Assembly: GCA_964247055.1 (NCBI GenBank)
Contig: OZ176051.1
Span: forward strand, 3,906,001-3,970,000
Reading direction: 5' to 3'
Length of the DNA stretch: 64,000 nucleotides
Source of the DNA: Paragordius varius
Taxonomy: Eukaryota > Animalia > Nematomorpha
Shown here piece by piece: positions 10,301 to 63,198 of the stretch. Numbering within the stretch: position 1 is the first letter of the stretch; every line of letters begins with the position of its first letter. The translations under genes and the position numbers were made by a program. Below the pieces are notes generated by a model that was given only the letters and a program-made list of their open reading frames with translations, did no database searches and had not been told where the DNA came from.

Positions 10301-13300
10301 TAAAACGCAAATGGTATATAATCTGATTACTTATATACAATGCAGCGATTAAATTTTAAATAACGAGTTGTTAACCTTTTCTGTGACAATCTGGTGTGCA
10401 ATATTGTAATTAAAAATATTATACCATTATTTTCTCGTCTGTTTGGATAAAAACTTTACGTTGATTATTTTGCATACATCAAGTTATCTATATAAGGTTC
10501 ATTTTATTTAGTAATATTTTATTAATATCAGAAACAGAAATCAAGAAAAAATTAGTTATATCTCAACAAGATAGAAAGCGATTAGTAAAACGAGTTTTTT
10601 TTGATGGAGAATGGACTGTGGATGTATCAAAGGATTTAGATATAAACTATAATACTGCTCGTCAAATTATGTATAAATATAAAAAAAACAATAGTTCAGA
10701 AATTCTAACTCGTGGAGGCACTAAAAACAAAAAAATTACGGAAGATATTATGCATTTCATAGATAATAAACTAACTTATCAGCCGTCATTAACAATTAAC
10801 CAGTTAAAAAATTTTTGGAAGATGAAAAATAAAATTATCTAAATCCTCTATAGACCGAGTAATCAAATCTTTAAAAATAACTTTGAAGTTAGCCCATCAT
10901 CTTAATGAAAAAGTCAATGATCCTCAAATAAAAGATTTAAGGAAAAAATACGCAATATGGTTTTCACAATCTTTCTCCGATGACTTAACAAATATTATTT
11001 ATTTGGATGAATGCGGTTATAATAACCATATTAGAAGAAGCCAAGGTCGATCCAAAAGTGGCACGAGAGCCAATATTGTGGTGTCTAGCGTAAAATGCAG
11101 AAACATCACTTTTATTGGAGCTCTGTCATTAAGAGGTATGGTTTATTACGAAATAGAAAGCCAAAGAACAGTCAATTCTCAACGCTTTACAAGTTTTTTT
11201 GATGGACTTTGTGAATATTTAAAGCGAGGCGATATTTAATATCATTTTATTATGGACAATGCACGGATTCACAAAAAAAATGAATTAAAAGGTAGAGCCG
11301 ATTTATACAAATACAAAATTGATTTTTTGTCCCCGTACAGTTATATGTTGAACCCAATCGAAATGGCATTTTCAATAATGAAAAATTTTGTCCGACAAAA
11401 TATTATATTAAACAATATGAATGCGAATGTGGAATTAGTGAATCTGATAAAATTGGCAGCGGGCTCCATAACATCGGAGGATAGCAGAAATTATTTTGAA
11501 AAGATAATGACAAATATGGTAAAGGCGGCAGCCGGTCTACCTTATATGTGATCTTTTTATAACATATACAATAAATGAAAACCATTTTTTAATATATTAT
11601 CTAAATTTGTCTCTTTAATAAAATCAAACAATGATTGATTTATTCAGGTATATTTGGTAATAGTTCAACTTTTTAAAAATAAGTCATTAAAGATTGTGTT
11701 GTGGAATATATGGGAAAAATTGTCATTAAATAATTGTGTTTTTTGCAAAATTTTATCCTAATACTAGCGTGAATCTCGTGCTGCTACGCAGCCCGAGGAA
11801 GTCCTTCGGACTTCTGGGGGGGGGGGGGGGGGTTCGAAGTTTGGATTTGAATGGGTCTACCGTTTTTCCTGTAGATCACAAAGCCAGCATTTTCCATTTT
11901 TATAAATATATAGATTACCATAAATAATGTTTTAATATCCATATATCTTTTAACATGCTATACATATGATAGATACTCCTTACTCAGCAGCTATCATCAA
12001 AGAAACGCTTGACTAAAATTTTTGCCTTTTAACAGGCCCTACGAAAAATCTTTCTCGAATTTTTACAGTCTCATACCGTGGACAAAAAAATACAATCAAA
12101 AAAATATTTTTGTGGACTTTGTTTTTTTTGAAAAAAATGGCTTTTACGGGGGGAGCGGGTAAAAAGAGGGCCTAAATCAAAAAAGTGACGCGACTATGTT
12201 CGGCGCAATCGAAAATAAGTAAACAAAATTGATATTTGAAATTGAATGGTCCAACACGTTCTCCGAAAAATTGACTTAACCCAGTTTTCACACGGGGTGG
12301 GCCCAAACTGGGGACCTAATTCCAAAAAAGGGCGAAGCTATTGTCGGGGCATTCATTAATGATTATATTTTTTCGATGTTTGGATTTGAATGGGTTCACC
12401 GGTTTTCCGGAAACAGATCACAAAGTTATATGAAAAATCAGTTTTTAGCGGCTAGCTCCTTACCCAGCAGCTATCATCAAATAAACGGTGGACTAAAATT
12501 TTTGCCTTTTAACAGGGAATACGTGGAATCTTTATTGAATTTTTAAGGTCTCATACCTAGGGCGAAAAATCGATTTAGAAAATTATTTTTGTGGACTTTG
12601 TTTTTTGAAAAAAATGGCATTTTACGGGGGGAGCGGGTAAAAAGAGGGTCTAAATCAAAAAAGTGGCTCGACTATGTTCGGCGCAATCGAAAATAAGTAA
12701 ACAAAAATCATATTTGAAATTGAATGGTCCAACACGTTCTCCGGAAAATTGTCTCAAAAACACGATTTTGTGGACTTCTGTTTTCAAAAAAAACCCGTTT
12801 TTCATACGGGGTGGGCCCGAACTGGGGGCCTATTTCAAAAAAAGGGCGAAGCTATTGTCGGGACATTTATTAATGATTATATTTTTTCGATATTTGGATT
12901 TGATTGGGTCTACCGGTTTTCCTGTACCAGATCACAAAGCCAGCATTTTCCATTTTTATAAATATATAGATGAGGATAAATAATGTATTAATATCCATAT
13001 ATCTTTTAACATGCTATACATATGATAGATACTCCTTACTCAGCAGCTATCATCAAAGAAACGCTTGACTAAAATTTTTGCCTTTTAACAGGCAATACGA
13101 AAAATCTTTCTCGAATTTTTACAGTCTCATACCGTGGACAAAAAAATACAATCAAAAAAATATTTTTGTGGACTTTGTTTTTTTTGAAAAAAATGGCTTT
13201 TACGGGGGGAGCGGGTAAAAAGAGGGCCTAAATCAAAAAAGTGACGCGACTATGTTCGGCGCAATCGAAAATAAGTAAACAAAATTGATATTTGAAATTG

Positions 13301-16300
13301 AATGGTCCAACACGTTCTCCGAAAAATTGACTTAACCCATTTTTCACATGGGGTGGGCCCAAACTGGGGACCTAATTCCAAAAAAGGGCGAAGCTATTGT
13401 CGGGGCATTCATTAATGATTATATTTTTTCGATGTTTGGATTTGAATGGGTTCACCGGTTTTCCGGAAACAGATCACAAAGTTATATGAAAAATCAGTTT
13501 TTAGCGGCTAGCTCCTTACCCAGCAGCTATCATCAAATAAACGGTGGACTAAAATTTTTGCCTTTTAACAGGGAATACGTGGAATCTTTATTGAATTTTT
13601 AAGGTCTCATACCTAGGGCGAAAAATCGATTTAGAAAATTATTTTTGTGGACTTTGTTTTTTGAAAAAAATGGCATTTTACGGGGGGAGCGGGTAAAAAG
13701 AGGGCCTAAATCAAAAAAGTGGCTCGACTATGTTCGGCGCAATCGAAAATAAGTAAACAAAAATCATATTTGAAATTGAATGGTCCAACACGTTCTCCGG
13801 AAAATTGTCTCAAAAACACGATTTTGTGGACTTCTGTTTTCAAAAAAAACCCGTTTTTCATACGGGGTGGGCCCGAACTGGGGGCCTATTTCAAAAAAAG
13901 GGCGAAGCTATTGTCGGGACATTTATTAATGATTATATTTTTTCGATATTTGGATTTGATTGGGTCTACCGGTTTTCCTGTACCAGATCACAAAGCCAGC
14001 ATTTTCCATTTTTATAAATATATAGATGAGGATAAATAATGTATTAATATCCATATATCTTTTAACATGCTATACATATGATAGATACTCCTTACTCAGC
14101 AGCTATCATCAAAGAAACGCTTGACTAAAATTTTTGCCTTTTAACAGGCAATACGAAAAATCTTTCTCGAATTTTTACAGTCTCATACCGTGGACAAAAA
14201 AATACAATCAAAAAAATAAAAAAGTGACGCGACTATGTTCGGCGCAATCGAAAATAAGTAAACAAAATTGATATTTGAAATTGAATGGTCCAACACGTTC
14301 TCCGAAAAATTGACTTAACCCAGTTTTCACACGGGGTGGGCCCAAACTGGGGACCTAATTCCAAAAAAGGGCGAAGCTATTGTCGGGGCATTCATTAATG
14401 ATTATATTTTTTCGATGTTTGGATTTGAATGGGTTCACCGGTTTTCCGGAAACAGATCACAAAGTTATATGAAAAATCAGTTTTTAGCGGCTAGCTCCTT
14501 ACCCAGCAGCTATCATCAAATAAACGGTGGACTAAAATTTTTGCCTTTTAACAGGGAATACGTGGAATCTTTATTGAATTTTTAAGGTCTCATACCTAGG
14601 GCGAAAAATCGATTTAGAAAATTATTTTTGTGGACTTTGTTTTTTGAAAAAAATGGCATTTTACGGGGGGAGCGGGTAAAAAGAGGGTCTAAATCAAAAA
14701 AGTGGCTCGACTATGTTCGGCGCAATCGAAAATAAGTAAACAAAAATCATATTTGAAATTGAATGGTCCAACACGTTCTCCGGAAAATTGTCTCAAAAAC
14801 ACGATTTTGTGGACTTCTGTTTTCAAAAAAAACCCGTTTTTCATACGGGGTGGGCCCGAACTGGGGGCCTATTTCAAAAAAAGGGCGAAGCTATTGTCGG
14901 GACATTTATTAATGATTATATTTTTTCGATATTTGGATTTGATTGGGTCTACCGGTTTTCCTGTACCAGATCACAAAGCCAGCATTTTCCATTTTTATAA
15001 ATATATAGATGAGGATAAATAATGTATTAATATCCATATATCTTTTAACATGCTATACATATGATAGATACTCCTTACTCAGCAGCTATCATCAAAGAAA
15101 CGCTTGACTAAAATTTTTGCCTTTTAACAGGCAATACGAAAAATCTTTCTCGAATTTTTACAGTCTCATACCGTGGACAAAAAAATACAATCAAAAAAAT
15201 ATTTTTGTGGACTTTGTTTTTTTTGAAAAAAATGGCTTTTACGGGGGGAGCGGGTAAAAAGAGGGCCTAAATCAAAAAAGTGACGCGACTATGTTCGGCG
15301 CAATCGAAAATAAGTAAACAAAATTGATATTTGAAATTGAATGGTCCAACACGTTCTCCGAAAAATTGACTTAACCCATTTTTCACATGGGGTGGGCCCA
15401 AACTGGGGACCTAATTCCAAAAAAGGGCGAAGCTATTGTCGGGGCATTCATTAATGATTATATTTTTTCGATGTTTGGATTTGAATGGGTTCACCGGTTT
15501 TCCGGAAACAGATCACAAAGTTATATGAAAAATCAGTTTTTAGCGGCTAGCTCCTTACCCAGCAGCTATCATCAAATAAACGGTGGACTAAAATTTTTGC
15601 CTTTTAACAGGGAATACGTGGAATCTTTATTGAATTTTTAAGGTCTCATACCTAGGGCGAAAAATCGATTTAGAAAATTATTTTTGTGGACTTTGTTTTT
15701 TGAAAAAAATGGCATTTTACGGGGGGAGCGGGTAAAAAGAGGGCCTAAATCAAAAAAGTGGCTCGACTATGTTCGGCGCAATCGAAAATAAGTAAACAAA
15801 AATCATATTTGAAATTGAATGGTCCAACACGTTCTCCGGAAAATTGTCTCAAAAACACGATTTTGTGGACTTCTGTTTTCAAAAAAAACCCGTTTTTCAT
15901 ACGGGGTGGGCCCGAACTGGGGGCCTATTTCAAAAAAAGGGCGAAGCTATTGTCGGGACATTTATTAATGATTATATTTTTTCGATATTTGGATTTGATT
16001 GGGTCTACCGGTTTTCCTGTACCAGATCACAAAGCCAGCATTTTCCATTTTTATAAATATATAGATGAGGATAAATAATGTATTAATATCCATATATCTT
16101 TTAACATGCTATACATATGATAGATACTCCTTACTCAGCAGCTATCATCAAAGAAACGCTTGACTAAAATTTTTGCCTTTTAACAGGCAATACGAAAAAT
16201 CTTTCTCGAATTTTTACAGTCTCATACCGTGGACAAAAAAATACAATCAAAAAAATATTTTTGTGGACTTTGTTTTTTTTGAAAAAAATGGCTTTTACGG

Positions 16301-19300
16301 GGGGAGCGGGTAAAAAGAGGGCCTAAATCAAAAAAGTGGCTCGACTATGTTCGGCGCAATCGAAAATAAGTAAACAAAAATCATATTTGAAATTGAATGG
16401 TCCAACACGTTCTCCGAAAAATTGACTTAACCCATTTTTCACACGGGGTGGGCCCAAACTGGGGACCTAATTCCAAAAAAGGGCGAAGCTATTGTCGGGG
16501 CATTCATTAATGATTATATTTTTTCGATGTTTGGATTTGAATGGGTTCACCGGTTTTCCGGAAACAGATCACAAAGTTATATGAAAAATCAGTTTTTAGC
16601 GGCTAGCTCCTTACCCAGCAGCTATCATCAAATAAACGGTGGACTAAAATTTTTGCCTTTTAACAGGGAATACGTGGAATCTTTATTGAATTTTTAAGGT
16701 CTCATACCTAGGGCGAAAAATCGATTTAGAAAATTATTTTTGTGGACTTTGTTTTTTGAAAAAAATGGCATTTTACGGGGGGAGCGGGTAAAAAGAGGGC
16801 CTAAATCAAAAAAGTGACGCGACTATGTTCGGCGCAATCGAAAATAAGTAAACAAAATTGATATTTGAAATTGAATGGTCCAACACGTTCTCCGAAAAAT
16901 TGACTTAACCCATTTTTCACACGGGGTGGGCCCAAACTGGGGACCTAATTCCAAAAAAGGGCGAAGCTATTGTCGGGGCATTCATTAATGATTATATTTT
17001 TTCGATGTTTGGATTTGAATGGGTTCACCGGTTTTCCGGAAACAGATCACAAAGTTATATGAAAAATCAGTTTTTAGCGGCTAGCTCCTTACCCAGCAGC
17101 TATCATCAAATAAACGGTGGACTAAAATTTTTGCCTTTTAACAGGGAATACGTGGAATCTTTATTGAATTTTTAAGGTCTCATACCTAGGGCGAAAAATC
17201 GATTTAGAAAATTATTTTTGTGGACTTTGTTTTTTGAAAAAAATGGCATTTTACGGGGGGAGCGGGTAAAAAGAGGGCCTAAATCAAAAAAGTGGCTCGA
17301 CTATGTTCGGCGCAATCGAAAATAAGTAAACAAAAATCATATTTGAAATTGAATGGTCCAACACGTTCTCCGGAAAATTGTCTCAAAAACACGATTTTGT
17401 GGACTTCTGTTTTCAAAAAAAACCCGTTTTTCATACGGGGTGGGCCCGAACTGGGGGCCTATTTCAAAAAAAGGGCGAAGCTATTGTCGGGACATTTATT
17501 AATGATTATATTTTTTCGATATTTGGATTTGATTGGGTCTACCGGTTTTCCTGTACCAGATCACAAAGCCAGCATTTTCCATTTTTATAAATATATAGAT
17601 GAGGATAAATAATGTATTAATATCCATATATCTTTTAACATGCTATACATATGATAGATACTCCTTACTCAGCAGCTATCATCAAAGAAACGCTTGACTA
17701 AAATTTTTGCCTTTTAACAGGCAATACGAAAAATCTTTCTCGAATTTTTACAGTCTCATACCGTGGACAAAAAAATACAATCAAAAAAATATTTTTGTGG
17801 ACTTTGTTTTTTTTGAAAAAAATGGCTTTTACGGGGGGAGCGGGTAAAAAGAGGGCCTAAATCAAAAAAGTGACGCGACTATGTTCGGCGCAATCGAAAA
17901 TAAGTAAACAAAATTGATATTTGAAATTGAATGGTCCAACACGTTCTCCGAAAAATTGACTTAACCCATTTTTCACATGGGGTGGGCCCAAACTGGGGAC
18001 CTAATTCCAAAAAAGGGCGAAGCTATTGTCGGGGCATTCATTAATGATTATATTTTTTCGATGTTTGGATTTGAATGGGTTCACCGGTTTTCCGGAAACA
18101 GATCACAAAGTTATATGAAAAATCAGTTTTTAGCGGCTAGCTCCTTACCCAGCAGCTATCATCAAATAAACGGTGGACTAAAATTTTTGCCTTTTAACAG
18201 GGAATACGTGGAATCTTTATTGAATTTTTAAGGTCTCATACCTAGGGCGAAAAATCGATTTAGAAAATTATTTTTGTGGACTTTGTTTTTTGAAAAAAAT
18301 GGCATTTTACGGGGGGAGCGGGTAAAAAGAGGGCCTAAATCAAAAAAGTGGCTCGACTATGTTCGGCGCAATCGAAAATAAGTAAACAAAAATCATATTT
18401 GAAATTGAATGGTCCAACACGTTCTCCGGAAAATTGTCTCAAAAACACGATTTTGTGGACTTCTGTTTTCAAAAAAAACCCGTTTTTCATACGGGGTGGG
18501 CCCGAACTGGGGGCCTATTTCAAAAAAAGGGCGAAGCTATTGTCGGGACATTTATTAATGATTATATTTTTTCGATATTTGGATTTGATTGGGTCTACCG
18601 GTTTTCCTGTACCAGATCACAAAGCCAGCATTTTCCATTTTTATAAATATATAGATTACGCTGATAATGATTAAAAGTTATTTTTGTATCTTGTTTTGAT
18701 ATTTATTATCAAAAATAAAACCGTTTTTATTGACTGGGAAAAGGTTTTTATTGCTTGGGAAAACGTTTTTATTGCTTGGGAAAACGTTTCAATTGACTGG
18801 GAAAACGTTTCAATTGACTGGGAAAACGTTTCGATTGACTGGGAAAACGTTTTGATTGACTGGGAAAACGTTTCGATTGACTGGGATAATGTTTCGATTG
18901 ACTGGGAAAACGTTTCCATTGACTGGGAAAATGTTTCGATTGACTGGGAAAACGTTTATTTAGACTGGGAAATGGTATATATATATATATATATATATAT
19001 CTCATATGATATTTATATTGGTATATTCTTTAAAAAATTATTTTTTTATTCCTATAAAAACATATGCTGACAATGACTCCTATATATACTTTGCCAGAGC
19101 GCTTTCTTTTCCTAATAGATTATTATTTAAAGTTCATATTTTAAACCTAACTAAATATTAAATTATGATGGCTTCTGTACGCTTTTTTAGACTTTTATCC
19201 GTCCAAAAAAATATTTCACAATTAATATAAAAAACGGTTTATTATATTACCTAAAATTTCCAATTTTTTGTAATTTAGATTCTTTTGCACAAAAAGAAGT

Positions 19301-28400: not shown

Positions 28401-31400
28401 TAAAAGTCAAGAGATTACACCACCTTTGATTGCAAGCAGCCACAAATTAAATGTTTGTGAAAATAATTTAACCAATTTCTCAAAACTTTTCCCAACTCCT
28501 GCCGTTAAAGAGAACGAAAAAAGTGATAAAAATATAACCAATCTTGTGGGCAAAATGATTGGTATGTTAGTCTTTTTTTTATTATCTAAAAAATTAATAT
28601 ATATATATACCATTTACAATTCAAATTCACCCTAAAACAATTCAAATTCACCCTAAAAATAAAATTATATGTTTTCGGGCTAATAAAACTTAACATTTAT
28701 ATGAAATAAGGCTATATGGCTTATTTATTATTTTTTCTGTATTATTTTAATTTTAAACAAAATTTTATTTGAGGGTGAATTTGAATTGTTCAAGAGGGAA
28801 TTTGTATTATTTAAGGGTGAATTTAAAGTAAATGATAATATATATATATATATATTCACTATCTCCATTACTTAAATTAGATACCAGTATTGAAAAGCCG
28901 TTTACGCTAGACAATTTAAAAATATCAATTCCTTCAAGTAGTTCAACTATTACATCACACAACGCTCTATTTTCAATCCCAAACACATCTATATTGAGTA
29001 TAATATAATTTTTAATTATGCTTATTAGGTTTAGAGTCTCAGATATTTTTATGGATTATTTAAACTTTAAATATATAAGTTTTGTAATTTGAATATTATA
29101 GCTTTTAAACTAACTTTCATAAATATAAGCTTGATTTAATTTTGTTATAAAGGAATTTAAATTATACTGCGAAATTTATAAACTAAAGACAGGCATTTTT
29201 ATAAGACACAACCATAATTTTTATGAAAAAACCTATCTATTTTGGGGTGCAAATTATGGAATGGAGATGTAAATTGTTAATATAGCCTAAATTATATATT
29301 TTTATATCTAATTTATGTGGTTAGAAAAGTAAAGTTAAAAAAAATTGCTATTGTCTTTTAAAAAAATATTTATCTTTTAGTTTTTCTCCTTGTTTTTATA
29401 CTAATTTTATTTTTTACTGTAATTTTAACTAGGTGGACTGTCGGATAAAACAAGCTCTATTTTTTCCATACCCTCTACTACTTTAACGAGCAACAATAGT
29501 TCAACACTTTCATTCCCTAAAATTTCGTTTAATTTTTCTACGACCTTGATGACACCTAATGTAACCAATTCAAACGCACTTAACAACGTAATAACTGGAA
29601 ATAAGGAACAACCATTATCTTTGGCAAATAAGGCAACAAGCAACATTGTTTCAACATCAAATTCTTCTCTGTTTGGGTTTGGATTTAACTCTGGTGCAAA
29701 CACTTTGAGTTTTGGTAATATAAATTTATTTCTTTTGCATAATATGTTTAACGCAGTTTAACCAAAAAATGCGGGATTTTTATAAAATTATATGGAGCAA
29801 AAAAATGTAGTCTATTAATATAATAAATTGTTTAATTTAAGAAATGAAATATTAGTTTCGGAGCTAGTTGATTTCTATAAATAGAACGAAAAAATGATCA
29901 GAAAATTGTTGTTCACAACAAATAAATTTACAGCTCTACATAATAATTTTGATCGTAATTACTTTTTATCTTATTAAAATGTTTTAATAAAATATCCGAT
30001 TTTTAAGCTCAATTGGCAACAAACGTTACCTCGACTAACAATGCACCCGCTGGTAAATTAGAAGAAACACAATCTTCTCAAAAAGCATCGTCAATCTCTA
30101 CTGAAAACAATCCAGAGAATAATAAAACTTTTGGATTTCAGGGTGGTTTTGGATTTGGCTCAAATAATACTTCGGGTGCGTTTTCTTTTGCTACTTTAGC
30201 CGCTTCAAATGCAAAAACGGTAGTTGGCGATAATACAAAAAAAGAAAGTGATGAAATCAAACCATTTTGGGGGAGTTCTACTGGTAAGGATTATATATAT
30301 ATATATATATATTTACTTTTAATTATGTCATAGATAAGTGTAAAATTCAAAAGAGGAAATTCACATCAATAAAATGATCTTTTATCGTTATCAAATTTTA
30401 TTTTGCCTTTACGTTAAAATAATTAATAATTTAAGAGAGAAACGCATTACTTTTACTTTGTTTGCAACTACTTTAGCAGATAACACTAAATGGACATTTG
30501 GATCATCCACAAATATTAATCCATCGTTATTAACGCCAAAACCGTTATTTGCTTTACAAAATAATTCAATCCAAAAGGTAGATTTAAATAATTAGAAAAA
30601 TGTTATTATTAACATGTTTAGTTGACCTATTCATTTTTCCAATCCTTTTTGTGATGTTAAAATCTATTTTTTTTTGTATTAAAAGCTTAAGGCGTCATAG
30701 TAGGTAGGGCGCCGGACTCTCACACTTTGTGCCAGAGTTTAAGCCTCGAAACTACGCATTTTTTCCATCATCACTGTCAGCCCTGGGCAGGCGAGTGTTA
30801 AAGCCTTCTCATGTCCGGATACAATTTAAGTCCTTACCCTTTAATAAAAAAGGAAAAAAGAGACTCTAAATTGTATATTATTATTGTATTAAAAGCTTAA
30901 GCATTTACATTATTTCGACTAAAGCTTCACTTAAATTTATCTATTGCTTTTGATAAAATTCGAATTTTAGCTTACCAAATTTTCAGCCTTTGTTTATGAT
31001 TTTTTTACCATTATAAACAATCATCTAAACAAGAGCTGATTGAAATTGGATTTCAGCGAAACATTTTTATTATAAAAAATAATTTTTTTAGAATTTTATT
31101 TTTGGTTATATCAAATAATTAATAGGGGCCCTGTAATACTGTATTTATGGCCCGTTCATCAAATACCGATAAAATATGATAATTTAAATCTATAATATCA
31201 AATGCCATCTCGAATTTATAATTTTTTTATAGTCACTGAGCCATACCCCAGTAGACAATGAGGAGGGAGGAAGCGGTGCTGAAGACTCTAATGATACCCT
31301 TGCCGCTTATGATAAAACGAACGAAATCATAAATGCTCCCATAGTTGAATTAGTTAACGTCGTTACTGGTGAAGAAAATGAAACGCCCATTTTCAATGAA

Positions 31401-34624: not shown

Positions 34625-37600
34625 ATGGGATGTTCCGCCTCAACAAGCAATAATCCAACCCGAGATTTGGGTAAGAATAGAGATGATGCAGGGAATTCTA
34701 ATATGCTGCCCGCTAAAAATAAGAATAAGGCAAACCTTACACCTCGACGTAGCGAAGATGCAGAAGCAAAATTGATCGAAGAAGGTACTAAAGGTCTCCT
34801 TGACTCCCGACTTCCACTTAATCGGAGACAACTGTTTTTGCTTGGGAAATCTTGGAAAGCCATATCCCGTAACATGGATATAGTGGGCGTCAAATTATTC
34901 ACTGGGTAACATTTTTACGTAAAAATTTAAAACGCCATCTTTATACTAAATAAACATTTTATGGAGATTATAAAGCCACCTATTGCTTGATAGTAAGTAC
35001 TATGACTTCTAAATGCAAAGGTAGGCTAAAATAATCTCCATGAAATGATTTAATAGTTTTTGAGTTTTAACATATAAGAAAAAATTCATATTGCTAGGTT
35101 TGTTTAATTTAATATTGCCCAGATAGCATATACAGAAAAGACAAGTATTAGCTAATCTACCATTCACAAGGCAAATTCATCTCGAACAATTCAAATTCAC
35201 CCTAAAAATAAATTATGTGTTTTCGAACTTATATAACTCATTATTAATATGAAACATATCTTTATGGCATAGATAATTATTTTTTCAGTATTATTATTCG
35301 TTAAAACAAAATTTTATTTTTTTAAAAAAAAATTATATAGGCAATTTTTATTCTTAAAAATAATTTATTTGAGGGTGAATTTGAATTGTTCAAGGGTGAA
35401 TTTAAATTGTAAATGGTATAGCAGAAAAAAGCGAAAATTTTATAGGCCATTAATATTGCCTATTGCTGCATGGCAATAATATATTTGAAAACTAGCAATG
35501 TACACTTACTCATGCTGTATGTAGTTTTGTTTTGTGATCTGAAATTGTGATTAGTTACTTATTTCTCATCCTAACTTTTATTCCTGGCTAATTTCAGTTT
35601 ATTTTGGATATTGTTTTTATTTATCTTTAATAGATATACCCGTTTTTTGTTTTTTTGTTTCATCTTTACCCGTTATAAAACTAATATATCTTTACTATAT
35701 GTTCTTATCATTAAGCACCGTAGACCTGTAGCTTGATTTGCAATAAAAAAGATTTGTTGAGATCTATGATATTAGGAACATTCTGATATCTTTTTCAAAT
35801 ATAATTGGGAAATAAGTTATTAAAATCGATTTTATAATATATCTTTCTTAAGGTTATTTTTATTTGGGAATTATTGTAATATAAATTTAATTTTTTAGAG
35901 TTAAAAATATGCAGAATCATCATTTGCATAATAAATTGGATAATAATTTTTAAGCAAATCATAAATTTAATATAATTTAATTATATGGCATATAAATTAT
36001 TTTATTTAATTAAGTAATTATCAAAATTTAATGCTGATATATTGCACTTTTGCATCTATTTTTATTAAATTAATATCAAGTTTCACCTAGTAATATTTAA
36101 GGTGGTAAATACTGTTATGATATTCTAAAAAATGATTAATAATTAATTAGTTCTACTACAAATAGAAAAAATTTTGCCCATTTCAGATACATTTCAAATT
36201 TAAAATTTTTGAAATGCTTTATATAAAAAATACCGATAATCCTAAGCTCTAAAGTTTTACTGATATTTTATAGAATTTCGTTGCAGGGGTCACATATTAC
36301 ATTTTTAAGAAAAACTAAAAAAAGATAGCATTTAAATAGAAAGAAGATAATTCAATCAGAATAAATATTGTTATACACTTAATAATATAACAATAGTTTT
36401 GTTAAAGTTAATTAAAATTGCCAATCGCATCGGTAAACTAACTATGCTATATGGTTTTCCCATACGATGGATCTTTTTACTCTATCTTATGAGAAAATAG
36501 TAAAAAATTTTTGGGACCAATCTCCAGATTTTTTGTCATTCCGTAAATTATATAATTTATCAACATTCTCAAAAAATAAAGATTGAAATCACCCGGAATA
36601 AAAATAAAAACAAATTTTTCCAAAAGACAACCATACCTTTTTAATCCTTAATTTTTTCCATTAAAATTATTTAACTACAATTTTAAAATATATAAACGAA
36701 GGTACAATTTTATTGCTAGTTTGCAAGTTATAAAAGTATTATTTGAAAAATTCGACCATTCTGACGATTATTTGTCTTTATATTTTAACGTTTTGTCCGT
36801 ATAATATCAATTTTTACTCTTACTGCTTTTTATATTTAGCTTATTTCTGAGTAATCCTGAACTCCTCGTCCTGTTCAAAAACATACAAGTTGACAAAGAT
36901 AAGGTTGGGGACCGCGAGGCATATGAGAATAGTTTAGAACTAGAAACGCATTCCGAAATCGTAATGAATACATTAGACGAGGCCATAAGCACTATCATAG
37001 ATTACGACAAATGCCATCAAATTTTAACCAGCATAGGTGCTTATCATTGTACTATCAAAGGTTTTCTCCCCGAATATTTTTTGGTACGTAGTTATTTTAA
37101 TTTATATTTCCAATCAGGTATGGGTGGGTTTTTAATAAAATAATCCCTACTAAAATATTGTGATATCTAATAACACCATTTAAGTAATGTCCGGTAACTT
37201 ATAAGCCACTCGAATATGATTTAATACCGATGATATATTATTATCTTTAAATCATTTAATTTGGAAATCTTTACTACTATTATTATTTTAGTAAGCTGTT
37301 TCTTTCAAATTAAATTGTAACATCTTCGGAAAAAATGGTATATTATTTTTTAGAAAATGTGAAAATAAATAGCCATTTCCATTTAATTCAAAAAAAACAA
37401 ACCATTTATAAAGCTTTTAAGGGATAATCCTTGAGCCTAGTCTACAATAACAGGATATTTATATTAAACAGTATGTTTTCTAAAATAATCAGACCCAATT
37501 AGATATCCGCAAAAATTAAATTATACAAGGGTAACGTACTAAATTTATTTTCTTATCCATCGATCTAAAAATTTTATATAGGATCAAATATAAAAACATC

Positions 37601-41247: not shown

Positions 41248-42820
41248 TTATTTAGAAGATGATGCAAAGATAGATTTGTAAGTTTCAGTAGCAAATATTT
41301 CCTCCTTTCCAAGTTTCTTTTTACTTTCAATAACGGCCGCATGAACTATCCCACAAGCGTTTACCATTGTTTTATTCTTTTTATATAAGTCGTTTGTGGT
41401 TATGGCCTCAGATATATCTAATTATTAAAAACAATTTCAATAATTTTTAAATTAACTGACTTATTTTATCTATTTATATGAGGTAAAAACAACGTATAAA
41501 TTATAAAAAATGAATCATTTAGGAGAACGCATGGGAATTCTTCAATAAATTACTTTTTAATAAAATTTCCAAATCAATTACACTAATGAAAGAGCTTTTT
41601 TAAGTAAAATGCAAATCGATCATGCAAATTATAAATAATTAACAGGGGTCAATAAAATTCTAATTGTTTATAAAAGATGGTGTTATGGCATTTTTTATCA
41701 CGAAAATTAATCAGTAAACTGAGAGCATAAAGAGAATTCGGATATAATGGGAAAACCCAAATCATCCAAAAATATAAATTTTTAATGAAAAAAACTATCT
41801 GATTAAGTCCAATCATAAAAAAATATAACTATACATTTCACGAGCAAAAATATAATATAATACGCTTTAACCAAACAAAATCAAATCCAATTTCAAACTA
41901 GGAGTAAGATAAACTTATCAATATGTTAATAATTATTAAGGCCATTGCGGTTTTATACGCTAAAATATTTCATAAATTGTTTGTTACAGCCAAAAAAACG
42001 ATGATAAAGAATAATACCTTTGCGTTTGGATGTTACGAAAGTATTGCCATTGACCTTTTTGGTATTTTCAAATCTCTGTAACATACGTTCTTTAAGTTGT
42101 TCAATTTCTTTTTCGTCATCGGAATAAAGGGGAATGAGATCCAAATCTTTGTCATAAGTCTGATTGCACTGATAAAAAGGGATTAATTATTAGCAAAAAG
42201 TACAAAAAGCATAAAAAGAATGTGTAGAAAAAATGTGTTACATTTGGGCATCTTGATTCTTTAATTTCTTTTAAGGCTTTTTCGGATATAACGCAACCAC
42301 ATTTGAATATAAAAGAAAATCTAAAATAAGATATAAATTAATATCAAAACTTGTGAATTCCGTTCATTTCGATTTGCAATATTGGACAAATATAATGAGG
42401 TATAAATTCCGTGCTTATCCCTTTTGTAAACATAATATGTTCATCTGAAACTTTCTTTGCGCTTGTTGAAGCATCCGTATTATTTTCGAAAGCTGGATTA
42501 AGCGTCAACTTAAGTTCTTTGACGTGTTTCAAGCTTTTTATATGAGGAGCATTTGGAATAGATTGTTTGTTGATTAGATGTGTAAGTATGATCTCTTTAT
42601 TATACATTCTAAATTTTAAACAAATTTGTACTTTCCGAGAGAGCAACCGACAACTGGATCTTTTAATTCTTCTTGAGAACTGGCACAATATTTCCATCTC
42701 GCTATTTTCTGAGCATCTTTATCAACCTAAAAAATAAGTTTTGTATATAACTTGTTCGGGTTTTGGTTTTTGCCGGACTAATTCATCACGGCGAGGTATT
42801 GTTCCACCATCACAACCCAT
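41248..42820 (-). CDS. RTF2: Replication termination factor 2 (exons 42820-42752, 42726-42632, 42608-42351, 42320-42242, 42168-42018, 41417-41248)
   Basis: Spliced product MGCDGGTIPRRDELVRQKPKPEQVDKDAQKIARWKYCASSQEELKDPVVGCSLGKMYNKE...HIKSLKHVKELKL...YICPILQIEMNGIHKFSFIFKCGCVISEKALKEIKESRCPNC...YKSIF matches the family signature MGCDGGTIPKRHELV...FICPV.GLEMNG..RF....CGCVFSERALKEI. Confidence 0.93.
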
Positions 42821-45800
42821 TTCAATCTTAAAATAGCCGTACAATAAAGTGGTATGTGTGCTGCAGTATTTTCATAATGTATAAGGTACTTATGCAAAAT
42901 GTGCTAAAAAATTATTATTGGGGTTTAAGAATCATTAAAGTTTTGACTTTTGTATTATTTTTTTATGAAGCCGCAAAATTAGCGCACACAAAATCAAATA
43001 AAGATTAATTCAAAAGCAAAAGACTTAACTGAAAATATAATTATAAATTAACATAACTCTTCACTTTTTGTCCTAGCATACCTTTTGGAGTTTCATATTC
43101 CAGAGCTTAATTTTATAAATAAACAACAGTTTTAAAAATAATTTTAGTTAAAATATAATTAACAGTTTTCATGTAATAGATAAAAAAGCTTTTGTTACAG
43201 TTATATTGTGTGATTTCTAGAGTCTAATATTAGGACAGCATTAAAACACGATCGGGCAAACAGCATAAAATTAAATCAAAATATATCAACTTAGTGGTAA
43301 AATATAGCCTGAAGCTTCTTTAATTATTCACAATTTCTAAGCATAATCTGCATTTATTTACCTGTTTCAGTAGCAACTTCAAATAATATATGGAAAAATA
43401 TGACGGCAAAAATGTTTGAGGAGTTGTTTACAATTTTACATTTTTAATATAAATTTTTATATCGTGCACCAAAAAAGCGAAAAAAAGCTCATTTTTGAAT
43501 TTGTTCCAATGCTAAAAATATTTTTTAAAATATATAAATTTTAAATAGCCCTGGCATAAAACCACCCCTAATAGGTTTTGAAGTGTTAGAATTAAATATT
43601 TTATATGATGTGGGTAACTGATTTTTGTTTATGAATTTAGAAAAGCGCCAAACTTTAACACTTCGATTCGAATTAGGGCATCTAAAAATCTCAGACATCA
43701 TTTAAATTAGTATATTTAAAAATCGTAAAAAACGGTCCTAGCTATAATTTATGCTTCTATCCTAACAAAAATTATAATAAGGCAAAGTATCTTAATAAAA
43801 TTTAGTTTTGGAAAAATGCTCCGTCTTTTTGGACGCGATATTTGTTTTACAAGTTATTGGCAAAATAGTGTTTTTAGGCTAAAATTAAGTTTACTTTTTA
43901 TTAAAATCACATTTAACATTGCTATAAACAGAAAAAATGGTATGTTTTGCAATATTTTTGTTTTTAGCTAATGTATATAGGCTGAATTTTAACCATTGGG
44001 TTTTCCTCTGAACAAGTAACATTAAGTATTTTTGAATGATTTTTTTATTAAATTTTGGTTCATAAAGATTATATAAGTGCAAACATTTCCCATGGTTTCA
44101 ACTTATTTCATATTTTTTAGAATATTTATTTTAAACAAGCCTGGGCTATATATCTACCCCAAATTGAATCGAAGGTCTGAAATAAATCCGTTGTATCCAA
44201 AAGTTAAATCTTTCCTTTAAATATATTCATCGTGATAAATCATTTTTATAGTAAGCGCCATGCATATTTTTGATCTTAAATGAAATAGAGCTTAAACAGA
44301 TTAAAATTGCTTTATAATTTTTTCAATTATTAAAATTAGCGTGGAAGTAAAGTTAATTTAAAACTCTATTTTGACATTTTAAGGCTATAATTTTTTACAG
44401 AAATCTATATAGAAATATGGAATGTTATATGAAAATTTTTCAAAGTTTTTTTAAGATATGTAGTATTCGTTGTTAGGAAAAAATTTAGTTAAGCTCTTTT
44501 AAAATTAGCCACTGGATAAGGCTCCATTACTGATTTCATCACTGTGAATTCAATTATTGTTATAAGAGATAAGGATTAAACACTGGGCTTATTTCTTATG
44601 TTAAAGGGAAAAAAATAGTTAACTATTTTTAAATAATCGGTTGTGGCCCGCCGTGTATTAAAGCCAAGGTATAGATACAACGAGCCTAGGAAACATGTGA
44701 GACCATATGGATTCAATAATTTAAATATTTCCCATATACTAAGAGAAATTTTCAATTAAGCATCATTAAATAAACCACTGTATAAGGTTCCACCCTCTGT
44801 ATTATACACCATCATTTAGAAATACGTAATTTTGAAGCTATTTTTTCCCTAAGTTATGAGACTATAAAAGGTTTTAATTATACTTGTAAAAAAGGAAATC
44901 ATTTTAGTATTGCGCTCTTTTATATTACTGGCAAGGGTCTAACCATATGTTAAATATGCCGCTATAAATAACTTGGCTATGAAGCATTTTTCAGAAAGTT
45001 ATTTAGACCATACGGATTCCATATTTTATATTGAAAAACACAAAAATTAAGTCAAGAGTCTTTTTAAATTAGCATGTTACCACTACATCTCACTCTTTTT
45101 GTCCGCGATGACATATTGGCATAGTTTTATGTCCCAGAACTCACGCTTTTAATTAAACTACTGTGAAAGCTGTTTTAGTTAAAAAATTTCAATAAATATT
45201 GTCCTCCTGTATTTCATAAAAAAGCTTATATTTTTTACAGTTGTGTACTTCACAATTGAGACAGCCTCAAAACACGAATGAAACAAACAGCTGATTTAAT
45301 CACTAAATATCAAGTTTTTGCTAACAAAATGCGCCCTAAAAGCAAATTAATTTTTATGTTTTTAAAGCATAATATACATTATTGCATAGCGGTGTATGAA
45401 AATTTAAAGAATAAAATGACGGGGGAAAAGGCTCAGTTGAGGATTTTTTTTACAATTAACTTTTATCAAGCTTGCGCATTAAAAGCTTTGACAATTATCA
45501 TATTTTATAATTCAGCCTAATACACTAAATAATTTTTAAATATACAAATTTAAAATCGCTCTCATATATAAACCTACCTCAAAAGGTCTTAAAGTGTTAC
45601 ATACGCTTGAAAGCATTTTACGGGACTCCTTTAAGATAATATAAATGTAACACATCCACAAAAAAATATCATGATGACATATATATTTTGTAAGAAAATA
45701 TATCAAAATTATTCTAGTGCTTTAGGTTTTGGCCTTTACGAGTGCTTTAAGAAAGTTATCTACACATTTTTGCTATATGGTCCATAACAGAAAATGGCAT

Positions 45801-60375: not shown

Positions 60376-63198
60376 TCATAAAACTGATAAAGGGTCCCTA
60401 CTCAAGCTTAGATTATTGAGCTTAGTTTGTAATGGAGCGTCTTGAGAAACATTTGAGTTATTTATAATAACTTCCTCGTTTACCGATTTTTTATCGTCTA
60501 CGATTGTAATATGATTATTTTGCAGTAATGATTGAGATGAATTTGGATTAGATAATAATGATTTTGTCCCACTTTCTATTGTTTGTGCCAAAGAGTTATT
60601 ACCCATAGAATTGTTAGGCATCTCCTCCTGCGTATGCAGAGTTGTTTGAGAGTTTTGTTCGTTGGTCGTTTCAAAATTTTTGGATAAATTAGAAGAGGTT
60701 TCCGTTTTATTTGTGCCTGTATCTACTGATGACTCCATATTTAAATCAACCGCATTAGAATTAATTTGATGAGAAGTGCCTTTTTGTTGAGAATGTAAAT
60801 GAGTTTTGAGATATTTTTTCTCTGCCGATATTCGTTCACAACATTGTGCCATGTAAAAACTATAGGGGCTAAATAATCGAACTGTCCGTATGTTATTATT
60901 ACCATTTGCGGCATACTGAACTGAAGATAAACTATAATTGCTATTTTTATTATTTACATTGTCTCCAGAATTATCCGGTGCAATATTTGTAGTTTTTGGC
61001 AATGAAGATTTTATGTATGAGAAGGCAAAATCCCAATTTGAAAACGCGGTGGGCGATGTTTCATCTAACAAATGGTACATTTTTTTATATAAAAATAGTT
61101 AAAAAAACTATATAAGATGCGATTTTTGCAATAAAAAACAACTAAAACATCAACAGCAAATTTTTAAACCTCGTTTAATAAATAACTTACGGGCTCTTAA
61201 TATTAGGACATAAGTTTATAAAATTTTTAATAAAATTTTTATTATAAAAATAACTATCGCGCATAATTCTAACACAATAACATTACAAATCTAATTAATA
61301 TATAATATCTCATACCATAAATATCTTGCGTATTTACCAACTGTGGAAGCAAGGAATTTTCTGCAAAAGAGGCACTGTTAGTCATATTAGAATTTGTAAC
61401 GTTTTCATTTAACTCTTGATTTTGATTAAAAGTGGCCATCGATTTTATATGCGGCGTAGAAATAGATTTGGGAACTGAGGGTGTTTTTATTTGATTCTGG
61501 CAAATTTTATCAACACTGTCTGTGGATTCATTGATAAGACCATATTGAACAATTTTATCCCAAGAAAACTGTATAATTTTATTCTACGTAAGACAAAAAA
61601 AAGTAAAAACATTAAAACTAATTTGGATGGTAATATTTAAATTTAATAAAAAAATGGTTTAATATATTAATATTAGATTTTTATTTATTCATGATGGAAA
61701 ATTTTATTATTAATATTCATAATAATAAATCAAATAAAATATACAGTAATCAATCATAAAGACTAATAAAAATTAAAAGGCGAATATTTTAAAAAGACAA
61801 ACATACAAACCTTATTTTTTTTATTATTCATTGCTTTTGGTTGCAAAAAAGGAATAATAGTTCACAATTGTAATAATTTAAGTTATATAAAAACTAGGTT
61901 TTAAAGTTGTATTTATTAAAAACAATCTTTTATTTTATTTCTTTTTAAAATTATTTATTATTGTACTTTGGGCTCTTAAATTTTTTTAAATAATGGTAAT
62001 TTTTTTTTTAAGATTTTAGCTATTTTGATATCAATATAATTATTTTATTATAAATACTTCTGATATCCCTTCATCATTCATTGCCTCCAATGCTAAACCA
62101 TATGGTGAAATTATTAATGCAACATTGTGATAGTCAGGGTGCAAATTTATGTGAGAATTTGTAGACATATCTTATGGGATAAAAATTTTTTTCTAAATTA
62201 AATTGAATAAAAAAAGATAAAAAAAATAAAAATGTTACTTGGATTAGATATCTTTTTGCGTTTGCGACTATTACATGGGCATGGGGGAAAGGTTATCACA
62301 TTGTAACTGTGTGGGTAAAAATATACACGAATAAAATTAACAATGTTAATAAATTTCGTAAAATTAAAAAGAGGGATAATAAAGGTAAATTCAAAGTATT
62401 TATTAAAAAAAGCTGGTAATTTTATCTGTTTTAGCTGGGTTAAAACAAGGTATGCCATTAAAATTCAAAATCACAGTGGAACAATTCAAATTCATCAAAA
62501 AAATAAATTATGTATTTTTGGGCTAATGTAACTCATCATTAATATGAAATATATTTTTACGACATAGTTTTATATATTTCAGCATTATATTAGTTTTAAA
62601 CAGAATTTCATATTTTAAAATAATTAAAAAATAAAGGTATTTATTAATGTAGAAAAACACTTAATTTATTTTAGGGTGAATTTGAATTGTTCAAGGTGAA
62701 TTTAAACTGGCAATGGTATTTATAAACATACAAATCAATATACATTCGATTAAAAAGGTAAAAAAAATTAAATACGTCCGTTTATACCGCCATATATCAT
62801 TAGCTAATAAATATTATCGAGCATAAATATATAATTTAAAGTAAAACTAAATCAGCAAACCATATTACTTGGCACATATATAAAACTCGAATAAACGCAC
62901 GAAATATAAATAATTTTAGTCGTTTAAAAATATATTAAAAACAAAATTATAAAATATAGAAATCACAATTTTATAAAATTTACCAGGAAAGAGGCAAGAC
63001 AAGTTTTAAAACACCATAGTAATCCTTGTTAGCTTTACATGCTTCTATACGTAAGGGTAATGGGTCGTCCTCATTGCTATTCAACAAATTTTTAGCAGAA
63101 ATAATGCAATTCATATCTGAATCTCCGAATAATGCTGATGATGGCCAAATAATTTTTACACTATTTTCAATCAGGTTTCGATTTAATTGTTGTAATGC
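60376..63198 (-). CDS. SNX27: Sorting nexin-27-like, 3' part (FERM-like domain and tail); the gene continues upstream
   Basis: Exons 63198-62984, 62306-62239, 62170-62058, 61583-61338 and ~61080-60376. They give YNVITFPPCPCNSRKR (cf. YNEIIFPHCACDSRRK), EGISENKIIQFSWDKI (cf. EGQLENQVIAFEWDEM) and FAFSYIK...VRLFSPYSFYMAQCCERI (cf. FCFEY...VKIFTPYFNYMHECFERV). The join into the last exon is unresolved. Confidence 0.82.
62455..62716. mobile_element. MITE (third copy of the CCATT...AATGG family) in an SNX27 intron
   Basis: CCATTAAAATTCAAAATCAC...CAATTCAAATTC / GGGTGAATTTGAATTG...CAATGG|TA. Confidence 0.75.

What the first reader, a model, noticed from the sequence alone, without database searches (positions are those of the whole stretch)
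41248..42820. RTF2 shows the same intron-size gradient independently: 25, 23, 30, 73, 600 nt
Seen: introns 42751-42727 (25 nt), 42631-42609 (23), 42350-42321 (30), 42241-42169 (73) and 42017-41418 (600). This gene is 35 kb from the RanBP2 5' end, on the other strand and among transposon-rich DNA, so the micro-introns are not confined to one compact chromosomal patch. The switch to a normal-sized intron comes at +579 nt from the ATG, close to RanBP2 (last micro-intron ends at +639, first large intron at +813). Inference: the rule is tied to distance from the transcription start.
Basis: partly seen in the sequence, partly recalled or inferred. Interest (0 to 1): 0.78.

Follow-up and report, generated by a model that had tools for sequence, protein, structure and literature searches.

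The report
Tiny introns crowd RTF2's start
An ordinary housekeeping gene (RTF2) of this hairworm-like animal really does begin with three introns of only 25, 23 and 30 bases, followed by 73 and 600; these are shrunken ancient introns, and in this genome such tiny introns sit almost only in the first ~0.5 kb of genes, as already described for flatworms.

Summary
Observation confirmed. Window 42820-41248 (minus strand) holds a six-exon RTF2 gene with GT-AG introns of 25, 23, 30, 73 and 600 nt. Each of exons 1-5 matches Pfam Rtf2 in seamless order. Introns 1-4 lie at the same codon and phase as in the hairworm Gordionus (389/44/103/401 nt) and the sea star Patiria (2028/1090/612/196 nt), so they are ancient introns that shrank.

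Interpretation partly supported. I surveyed 13 protein families across the genome (203 usable exon junctions).
- 20 of 21 introns of 38 nt or less lie in the first 150 codons (p=2e-7).
- In genes anchored at the N-terminus, none starts more than ~450 nt from the ATG.
- None follows a large intron, apart from one unverified myosin case.
- The rule is not deterministic: 14 of 34 introns inside that zone are large.
- Beyond the tiny class, size does not track intron order. This is a 5' zone that permits micro-introns, not a gradient.

5'-clustered "microintrons" are published for flatworms (about 37 nt). Here they are 21-36 nt, in a different phylum.

No RNA evidence could be obtained. The scan has noted this genome's micro-introns before, on other DNA.

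The parts
42752..42820 (-). RTF2 exon 1 (ATG at 42820; 69 nt; MGCDGGTIP...)
   Evidence: Pfam Rtf2 profile 1-23, 34 bits. Same length as Gordionus exon 1.
42727..42751 (-). intron 1, 25 nt, GT-AG, phase 0
   Evidence: Same column and phase as in Gordionus (389 nt) and Patiria (2028 nt).
42632..42726 (-). exon 2 (95 nt)
   Evidence: Pfam Rtf2 profile 24-54, 31.4 bits. 95 nt in Gordionus too.
42609..42631 (-). intron 2, 23 nt, GT-AG, phase 2
   Evidence: Orthologous intron is 44 nt in Gordionus and 1090 nt in Patiria.
42351..42608 (-). exon 3 (258 nt)
   Evidence: Pfam Rtf2 profile 56-123, 48.8 bits. 61% identical to Gordionus P0001 residues 56-137.
42321..42350 (-). intron 3, 30 nt, GT-AG, phase 2; in frame but contains stops
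   Evidence: Orthologous intron is 103 nt in Gordionus and 612 nt in Patiria.
42242..42320 (-). exon 4 (79 nt; zinc-finger cysteines)
   Evidence: Pfam Rtf2 profile 126-150, 31.3 bits. 79 nt in Gordionus too.
42169..42241 (-). intron 4, 73 nt, GT-AG, phase 0 (ordinary small class)
   Evidence: Orthologous intron is 401 nt in Gordionus and 196 nt in Patiria.
42018..42168 (-). exon 5 (151 nt)
   Evidence: Pfam Rtf2 profile 152-188, E=0.017. tblastn with Gordionus P0001.
41418..42017 (-). intron 5, 600 nt, GT-AG, phase 1; unique sequence
   Evidence: Needed to join exon 5 to the conserved C-terminal exon in frame. Recovered by the homology-free script. No repeats found in it. Not at the same column as the Gordionus intron (17 codons away, same phase).
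41248..41417 (-). exon 6 (170 nt including TAA at 41250-41248)
   Evidence: 55% identity to the Gordionus RTF2 C-terminus (...KAAVLESHKKL...AYKSIFSSS).
43655..44208 (.). about 555-nt dispersed repeat 835 nt upstream of the RTF2 ATG (context, not part of the gene)
   Evidence: blastn copies at 70-74% identity lying 130-700 nt upstream of six other gene starts.

Best explanation
This is the single-copy RTF2 (replication termination factor 2, Rtf2 RING-finger) gene of an AT-rich animal whose closest sequenced relative is the hairworm Gordionus. Its first four introns are ancient bilaterian spliceosomal introns. In this lineage the first three have been whittled down to 23-30 nt. That puts them in a discrete class of 21-36-nt GT-AG micro-introns, which exists beside a 50-80-nt class and a class of 0.1 to several kb. 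Shown here: micro-introns occur as uninterrupted runs starting at the first intron. They are confined to roughly the first 0.5-0.65 kb after the ATG. They essentially never follow a large intron. Within that zone an intron may still be small or large. So the 25/23/30/73/600 series is three members of the 5'-restricted class followed by two ordinary introns, not a continuous gradient. Inferred, about 35% likely: the lower limit on intron length depends on position. Introns this short, with weak GT[A/T] donors that rarely have G at exon -1, may be recognised by intron definition only in the promoter- or cap-proximal, early-elongation context. Further downstream the floor is about 50 nt, and transposon insertions inflate introns there. 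The confidence given is for the descriptive part (real gene, shrunken ancestral introns, 5'-restricted class); the mechanism is rated separately at about 0.35.
For: Gene model and colinearity. Single copy in the genome.

Shared intron positions and phases with Gordionus and Patiria, and approximately with Priapulus.

A second gene, RalA, has 21- and 24-nt introns exactly where Gordionus has 43 and 52 nt.

Size classes from DNA-resolved introns:
- micro: 21, 23, 23, 25, 25, 26, 28, 30, 30, 33 and 36 nt, all at CDS position 422 or earlier
- small: 53-79 nt
- large: 118 nt or more

Survey of 13 families. Micro/small/large counts by codon bin:
- 0-50: 5/5/1
- 50-100: 11/7/28
- 100-150: 4/3/24
- 150-250: 0/4/28
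- 250-400: 1/0/34
- deeper: 0/10/38
Fisher p=1.9e-7.

Distance from the ATG: micro 86-440 nt, and 0 micro among 35 introns beyond 450 nt (p=6e-5).

No micro or small intron after a large one at 5' coding positions (p=1e-4).

The micro:small ratio is 20:15 in the 5' part against 1:14 deeper (p=0.001). This argues for a position-specific floor rather than uniform shrinkage.

Genes holding both micro and large introns: the micro-introns come first in 13 (9 firm, 4 inferred from in-frame extras) against 1.

Large introns carry copies of a roughly 250-nt dispersed element.

G at exon position -1: 1 of 11 micro donors against 28 of 54 others (p=0.017).
Against: - There is no RNA evidence. Searches with Gordionus RTF2 and with the RalA exon found no transcript-derived protein of this species.
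- One candidate exception: a roughly 32-nt frame-switching gap at myosin-head profile position about 311, downstream of 880- and 550-nt introns (C5:4360286/4360301). I could not read its DNA.
- Most of the survey rests on exon-hit coordinates. Where DNA was available the estimates were exact (28, 25, 26 and 23 nt), but only about 30 genes were resolved at base level.
- In-frame micro-introns without stops, such as the 24-nt one in RalA, escape the method.
- Distances are from the ATG, not from a mapped transcription start.
- The mechanistic part is untested.
- Intron 5 of RTF2 is not at the Gordionus position, so 'all five are ancestral' holds only for introns 1-4.
Confidence: 0.78

Rival explanations
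1. One reading: intron size is determined by distance from the transcription start. Introns are micro up to about 0.6 kb and normal beyond, with a common switch point.
For: RTF2 switches at +579. The RanBP2 micro run ends at +639. No micro donor lies beyond about 450 nt in 12 N-anchored cases.
Against: 14 of 34 introns within 450 nt of the ATG are large. Examples: Ras C3:9539222 has 2976 nt at codon 53, and CCT C1:14860511 has 589 nt at CDS position about 200. The switch comes anywhere from the first intron onwards.
Confidence: 0.07
2. Purely mutational origin. A genome-wide deletion bias shrinks all introns, and transposon or repeat insertions re-expand them. The 5' zone stays small because insertions near promoters are purged, or because a tiny intron is a tiny target. 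No position-dependent splicing constraint is involved.
For: This genome (110.6 Mb) has smaller RTF2 introns than Gordionus at all five positions. Large introns contain dispersed 250-nt elements. A different repeat sits just upstream of many genes, so insertion is clearly patterned around gene starts.
Against: Deep introns stop shrinking at about 50 nt. There are 14 small against 1 candidate micro at depth, compared with 15 against 20 in the 5' part (p=0.001). Large introns do occur in the 5' zone, so insertions are tolerated there.
Confidence: 0.25
3. Chance, or bias in how introns were found: the RTF2 order is coincidence, and micro-introns are simply easier to see at conserved N-termini.
For: For RTF2 alone, three micro-introns coming first among five has a 1 in 10 chance.
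Against: The family survey detects junctions the same way at every depth and still gives 20 of 21 micro in the first 150 codons. HECT and Helicase_C domains, which lie deep in genes, gave 0 micro in 19 junctions.
Confidence: 0.03
4. The short segments are not introns. They could be assembly errors, frameshifts in a decaying gene, or translational recoding.
For: There is no RNA evidence.
Against: Every segment has exact GT...AG ends. Removing them gives gap-free Pfam colinearity. Introns 1-4 match orthologues in position and phase down to a sea star. The same signature appears in dozens of unrelated genes.
Confidence: 0.02

Closest known systems
Flatworm microintrons (Opisthorchis felineus, also Schistosoma, Clonorchis, Echinococcus, Macrostomum): Ershov et al. 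2019, BMC Genomics, PMC6530080 (read)
   Same: Multi-peaked intron length distribution (37, 90 and about 3000 bp there; about 24, about 65 and 0.2-3 kb here). Microintrons lie next to each other in clusters and preferentially near the transcription start or 5' end of genes. The authors also suggest intron definition as the cause.
   Different: A different phylum: Platyhelminthes there, a Gordionus-related ecdysozoan here. The peak is about 37 nt there against 21-30 nt here. Flatworm microintrons are reported to have splice sites closer to consensus, whereas donors here are reduced to GT[A/T] and rarely have G at exon -1. Orthology to long ancestral introns was shown here for RTF2 and RalA.
Ultra-short animal introns of myxobolid Myxozoa and Dicyema japonicum: Hadjez et al. 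2026, Mol Biol Evol, PMC13644364
   Same: Introns under 30 nt in an animal, at conserved ancestral positions, with the 5' splice signal reduced to about 'GTa'. The organisms are parasitic.
   Different: There the whole intron population is short (median 22-27 bp). Here the class is a minority confined to gene 5' ends, beside kb-sized introns in a repeat-bearing 110-Mb genome. That survey of 51 metazoan genomes found such introns only in those two groups, and its text does not mention nematomorphs.
Ciliate tiny introns (Paramecium about 25 nt, Stentor 15-16 nt); from my own knowledge plus titles listed
   Same: Similar length, GT-AG ends, AT-rich.
   Different: They are genome-wide and not tied to position. 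The organisms are unicellular with variant genetic codes; this gene uses the standard code.
General eukaryotic rule that first introns are the longest (Bradnam and Korf 2008; from my own knowledge)
   Same: Intron length depends on order within the gene.
   Different: The sign is opposite: here about half of first introns are the shortest class.

Membership tests
Rtf2 / RTFDC1 (Pfam PF04641) | Match to the Rtf2 profile from position 1 (MGCDGG start) above the curated cut-off | tested here: met
   Exons 1-4 each exceed the 27.4-bit cut-off on their own (34, 31.4, 48.8 and 31.3 bits) and are colinear.
Rtf2 / RTFDC1 (Pfam PF04641) | Orthology to animal RTF2 (best hits full length, conserved C-terminal YKS[IL]F motif) | tested here: met
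   Exon 3 is 61% identical to Gordionus RTF2, the best hit in 1.8 billion representatives. The C-terminus aligns. There is one locus in the genome plus one weak, distant match.
U2-type spliceosomal intron | GT...AG termini and restoration of the reading frame on removal | tested here: met
U2-type spliceosomal intron | Position and phase shared with orthologues | tested here: met
   Introns 1-4 are shared with Gordionus and Patiria. Intron 5 is not at the same column.
U2-type spliceosomal intron | Removal from mature RNA | not testable with these tools
   No transcript-derived sequence of this species was found.
Flatworm-type 5'-clustered microintrons | A discrete short peak in a multi-modal intron length distribution | tested here: met
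   21-36, 53-79 and 118 nt or more, with empty gaps between, in 67 DNA-resolved introns.
Flatworm-type 5'-clustered microintrons | Preference for the 5' end of genes | tested here: met
   20 of 21 lie in the first 150 codons, p=1.9e-7. Donors lie 440 nt or less from the ATG.
Flatworm-type 5'-clustered microintrons | Microintrons adjacent to one another | tested here: met
   Runs of 3 in RTF2, 2 in RalA, 2-3 in Arf and UQ_con genes, and 7 in RanBP2.
Flatworm-type 5'-clustered microintrons | Peak near 37 nt, with splice sites closer to consensus than in other introns | tested here: not met
   Lengths are 21-36 nt, mostly 21-30. Donors are GT[A/T] with G at -1 in 1 of 11.
Myxozoan/dicyemid-type ultra-short introns | Introns under 30 nt at conserved positions | tested here: met
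   25 and 23 nt in RTF2; 21 and 24 nt in RalA.
Myxozoan/dicyemid-type ultra-short introns | Genome-wide median intron length under 30 nt | tested here: not met
   Only 21 of 203 surveyed junctions are 38 nt or less; 160 are 100 nt or more.

The most novel reading that the evidence does not exclude
The minimal length a spliceosome can handle is not a constant of the organism but depends on position in the transcript. In this animal, introns of 21-30 nt are spliceable only within about 0.5 kb of the promoter or cap (early-elongation polymerase, cap-binding complex or promoter-proximal chromatin helping intron definition). The floor elsewhere is about 50 nt. Hairworms and flatworms would have reached this state independently.
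Probability: 0.3. Interest if true: 0.8.

Novelty: new variant of a known kind. Interest (0 to 1): 0.55.

Why it matters
- Annotation: standard gene finders use minimum intron lengths of 30-40 nt or more. They will break or mis-frame the 5' ends of perhaps half the intron-bearing genes of this genome. Stop-free in-frame micro-introns, such as the 24-nt one in RalA, will be annotated as peptide insertions.
- Third lineage: introns under 30 nt are published for only two animal lineages, and in both all introns are short. Here they sit beside kb-sized introns.
- Positional pattern: they follow a rule reported so far for flatworms. Two distant phyla showing 5'-clustered micro-introns suggests a general link between promoter-proximal transcription and intron definition.
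- Testability: the link can be tested with RNA-seq and minigenes.
- Evolution: the RTF2 and RalA comparisons show that the tiny introns are shrunken ancestral introns, not new insertions.

Tried and rejected
- A word search with exon 3 alone found nothing because of the length window. The full HMMER search was needed.
- An exact look-up of the neighbouring AsnS protein, meant to name the assembly, found nothing.
- A PDB sequence search with exon 3 found nothing.
- I tried to fetch 72 gene regions for base-level modelling. I did not seek that DNA by another route. Myosin, kinesin, Arf, UQ_con, HECT and the other later families therefore rest on hit coordinates only.
- My first exon-chain solver mis-placed introns, because read-through HMM hits gave false support. 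Giving overlapping hits density-ranked ownership of positions, trimming hit ends at stops, and adding splice-site matrices fixed RTF2 exactly.
- Two apparent deep 30- and 51-nt 'introns' (HSP70 on C8, CCT on C1) were artefacts of over-extended hits and were discarded.
- Homology-free modelling of the RanBP2 5' end preferred skipping its short exons. Only the micro-intron-restricted search reproduced the seven introns.
- The old Nematostella RTF2 model has a single 51-nt intron and was uninformative. The exact spliced alignment failed for Priapulus because of Ns, so only approximate positions came from tblastn.
- P0164, the top RalA hit, is a duplicated fragment and not a transcript of this species.
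- I considered a ciliate origin and rejected it: the gene uses the standard code, all Gln codons are CAA or CAG, and its relatives are animal RTF2 proteins.

Full report
**Observation.** On the minus strand, window 42820-41248 holds six exons: 42820-42752, 42726-42632, 42608-42351, 42320-42242, 42168-42018 and 41417-41248. They are separated by GT-AG introns of 25, 23, 30, 73 and 600 nt. Together they give an 822-nt frame that ends in TAA. Read without splicing, the frame hits stops or shifts at each intron.

The joined model was never sent to a search or folding tool. I concatenated the exons only inside local scripts, from window.fa, to check the frame and to align the product with three orthologues.

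Exons 1-5 match Pfam Rtf2 at profile positions 1-23, 24-54, 56-123, 126-150 and 152-188. The skipped positions are the split codons. Exons 1-4 each pass the family cut-off alone. Exon 6 aligns to the C-terminus of Gordionus RTF2. A hit-anchored exon-chain solver that I wrote reproduces 25/23/30 exactly. A homology-free version recovers 25, 23, 73 and 600. The genome has one RTF2 locus.

**Which animal.** The window is G000:C2:3906001-3970000, in a 110.6-Mb assembly of 44 contigs with about 26-29% G+C. The best relative of exon 3 among 1.8 billion representative proteins is P0001, at 61% identity; the next best are 49% or less. P0001 comes from assembly GCA_954871325, which is Gordionus sp. m RMFG-2023, a horsehair worm. 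The genome is therefore most likely a nematomorph other than Gordionus. This agrees with earlier notes of this scan, which I treated as leads only.

**Are these ancestral introns that shrank?** Yes for introns 1-4.
- An exact spliced alignment of Gordionus RTF2 gives exons of 69/95/249/79/199/185 nt, introns of 389/44/103/401/1875 nt and phases 0, 2, 2, 0, 1.
- The window gene has exons of 69/95/258/79/151/170 nt and the same phases.
- In a three-way alignment, introns 1-4 fall in the same column and phase in this genome, in Gordionus and in the sea star Patiria miniata (2028, 1090, 612 and 196 nt) (species).
- Priapulus shows the same exon breaks approximately.
- Intron 5 lies 17 codons from the Gordionus intron, in the same phase, inside a fast-evolving linker. 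Its orthology is open.

A second gene gives the same picture. RalA (C2:9616675) has a 21-nt intron and a stop-free, in-frame 24-nt intron. Removing the second restores the invariant AAIRDNYF motif. Both lie exactly where Gordionus RalA has 43- and 52-nt introns. Gordionus then has a 41-nt intron, which is lost here, and a 2317-nt intron. So short-then-long already exists in Gordionus RalA, with a floor near 41-52 nt. The drop to 21-30 nt is specific to this lineage.

**Is there a positional rule?** I searched the whole genome, six frames, with 13 Pfam families: CCT, Ras, HSP70, myosin head, tRNA-synt_1, kinesin, proteasome, UQ_con, Aldedh, HECT, Helicase_C, Adaptin_N and Arf. Intron length at each pair of adjacent exon hits was estimated as the genomic gap minus three times the profile gap. 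Where I held DNA, this estimate matched the base-level solution exactly (28, 25, 26 and 23 nt).

Of 203 usable junctions, 21 are 38 nt or less. Micro/small/large counts by approximate codon position are:

| Codon position | Micro | Small | Large |
|---|---|---|---|
| 0-50 | 5 | 5 | 1 |
| 50-100 | 11 | 7 | 28 |
| 100-150 | 4 | 3 | 24 |
| 150-250 | 0 | 4 | 28 |
| 250-400 | 1 | 0 | 34 |
| deeper, or C-terminal domains | 0 | 10 | 38 |

- Micro-introns are enriched in the first 150 codons (p=1.9e-7).
- In genes anchored at the N-terminus, micro donors lie 86-440 nt from the approximate ATG. Within 450 nt the counts are 12 micro, 8 small and 14 large. Beyond 450 nt they are 0, 0 and 35 (p=6e-5 and 1e-8).
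- At 5' coding positions, introns preceded by a large intron are all large (16 of 16). Where no large intron comes first, the counts are 20 micro, 15 small and 37 large (p=1e-4). This points to distance along the primary transcript, or to an unbroken run from the first intron, rather than to position in the mRNA.
- In genes that hold both classes, the micro-introns come first in 13 (9 firm, 4 inferred from in-frame extras with stops) against 1.
- About half of first introns are micro.
- DNA-resolved introns fall into three separate groups: 21-36, 53-79 and 118 nt or more.

**What the rule is not.**
- It is not deterministic. Kilobase introns occur at codons 36-110 in several Ras, Arf, CCT and adaptin genes.
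- Some neighbours have no introns at all. AsnS starts with MCGI at its ORF start, and Ssl1 is a single ORF.
- There is no common switch point.
- Outside the micro class, order and size are unrelated (mean Spearman about 0).
- 'Gradient' therefore overstates it. RTF2 shows three members of a 5'-restricted class, then one ordinary small intron and one ordinary large one.
- One candidate exception exists: a frame-switching gap of about 32 nt at myosin-head position about 311, after 880- and 550-nt introns.

**How it may work.**
- Shown: the tiny introns are shrunken ancestral introns. They have minimal signals: GT[A/T] donors with G at exon -1 in 1 of 11 against 28 of 54 other introns, a T-rich tail and TAG acceptors (p=0.017).
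- Shown: deep introns stop shrinking near 50 nt. The micro:small ratio is 20:15 in the 5' part and 1:14 deeper (p=0.001).
- Shown: large introns carry copies of a roughly 250-nt dispersed element.
- Inferred: a position-dependent lower limit, under which very short introns are recognised by intron definition only near the promoter or cap.
- Rival: a purely mutational account, with deletion bias plus insertions that are purged near promoters. I cannot exclude it.

**Comparison with what is known.** Introns under 30 nt in animals are published only for myxobolid myxozoans and Dicyema, where nearly all introns are short (PMC13644364). The positional pattern does have a clear precedent. [quoted passage not shown] From memory, the Schistosoma mansoni genome paper also reported small 5' and large 3' introns; I could not retrieve it. 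The present case is therefore a new variant. It has flatworm-like architecture, lengths in the myxozoan range, lies in a different phylum, and is traceable to long ancestral introns.

**Limits.**
- No RNA evidence was found.
- Distances are measured from the ATG, not from a mapped start.
- Most junctions come from hit coordinates.
- For RanBP2 I checked only that a seven-intron micro path exists and is unlikely by chance.
- This scan has noted the micro-intron class of this genome several times on other DNA.

Noticed in passing
window 43655-44208: A roughly 555-nt dispersed repeat lies 835 nt upstream of the RTF2 ATG. In the roughly 177 kb of other loci I held, its copies (70-74% identical, in either orientation) all lie 130-700 nt upstream of gene starts (Rac-like C4:10127425, HSP70 C6:5389419, Ras C1:10837720, Ras C3:8847802, Arf C10:1742354 and C11:1307069). 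None lies in an intron. It may be a transposon that targets promoters.
   Followed up: partly
window 35150-35420, 28597-28770, 62443-62709: A roughly 250-nt dispersed element (72-86% identical copies) sits inside large introns of several CCT, HSP70 and Ras genes. In CCT C1:14862395-14862851 it makes up over half of a 458-nt intron. Insertions therefore contribute to the large-intron class.
   Followed up: partly
window about 10000-19000 (+), body of RanBP2: Near-identical (96-99.9%) tandem copies up to about 2 kb long cover 75-100% of this stretch. This could be a very recent internal amplification of RanBP2 repeats, or collapsed or expanded assembly.
   Followed up: no
L035:1713-1736 (G000:C2:9616887-9616910): A 24-nt GT-AG micro-intron in RalA is in frame and has no stop. 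Read through, it inserts YHIYLRSR into the invariant AAIRDNYF motif. Such cases will be annotated as peptide insertions.
   Followed up: yes
G000:C5:4357115-4362715 (-), a myosin gene: This is the only candidate for micro-introns deep in a gene. There is a frame-switching gap of about 32 nt at head profile position about 311. Two further hits carry 27- and 51-nt in-frame extras with stops, at profile 311-413 and 453-513. I had no DNA to check them.
   Followed up: no
window 650-2683 (-) and 5961-7325 (-): Asparagine synthetase (677 aa, starts MCGI) and the TFIIH subunit Ssl1/GTF2H2 (454 aa) are single uninterrupted ORFs, that is, intronless genes next to intron-rich ones.
   Followed up: partly
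G000:C10:1742354-1742869 and C11:1307069-1307584: Two Arf loci give identical scores and lengths, and their flanks carry the same repeat. They may be duplicated contigs or haplotigs rather than two genes.
   Followed up: no
G000:C5:1155534-1155733 (-): Two Arf exon hits in different frames overlap by 7 nt while their profile positions run on without a gap (61-91, then 92-131). This could be a frameshifted pseudogene or an unusual junction.
   Followed up: no
G000:C4:9228413-9228766 (L003): A weak second Rtf2-profile match (29.8 bits, profile 34-146) lies inside a 378-aa open frame. It is probably a distant Rtf2-domain paralogue, not a retrocopy of RTF2.
   Followed up: no
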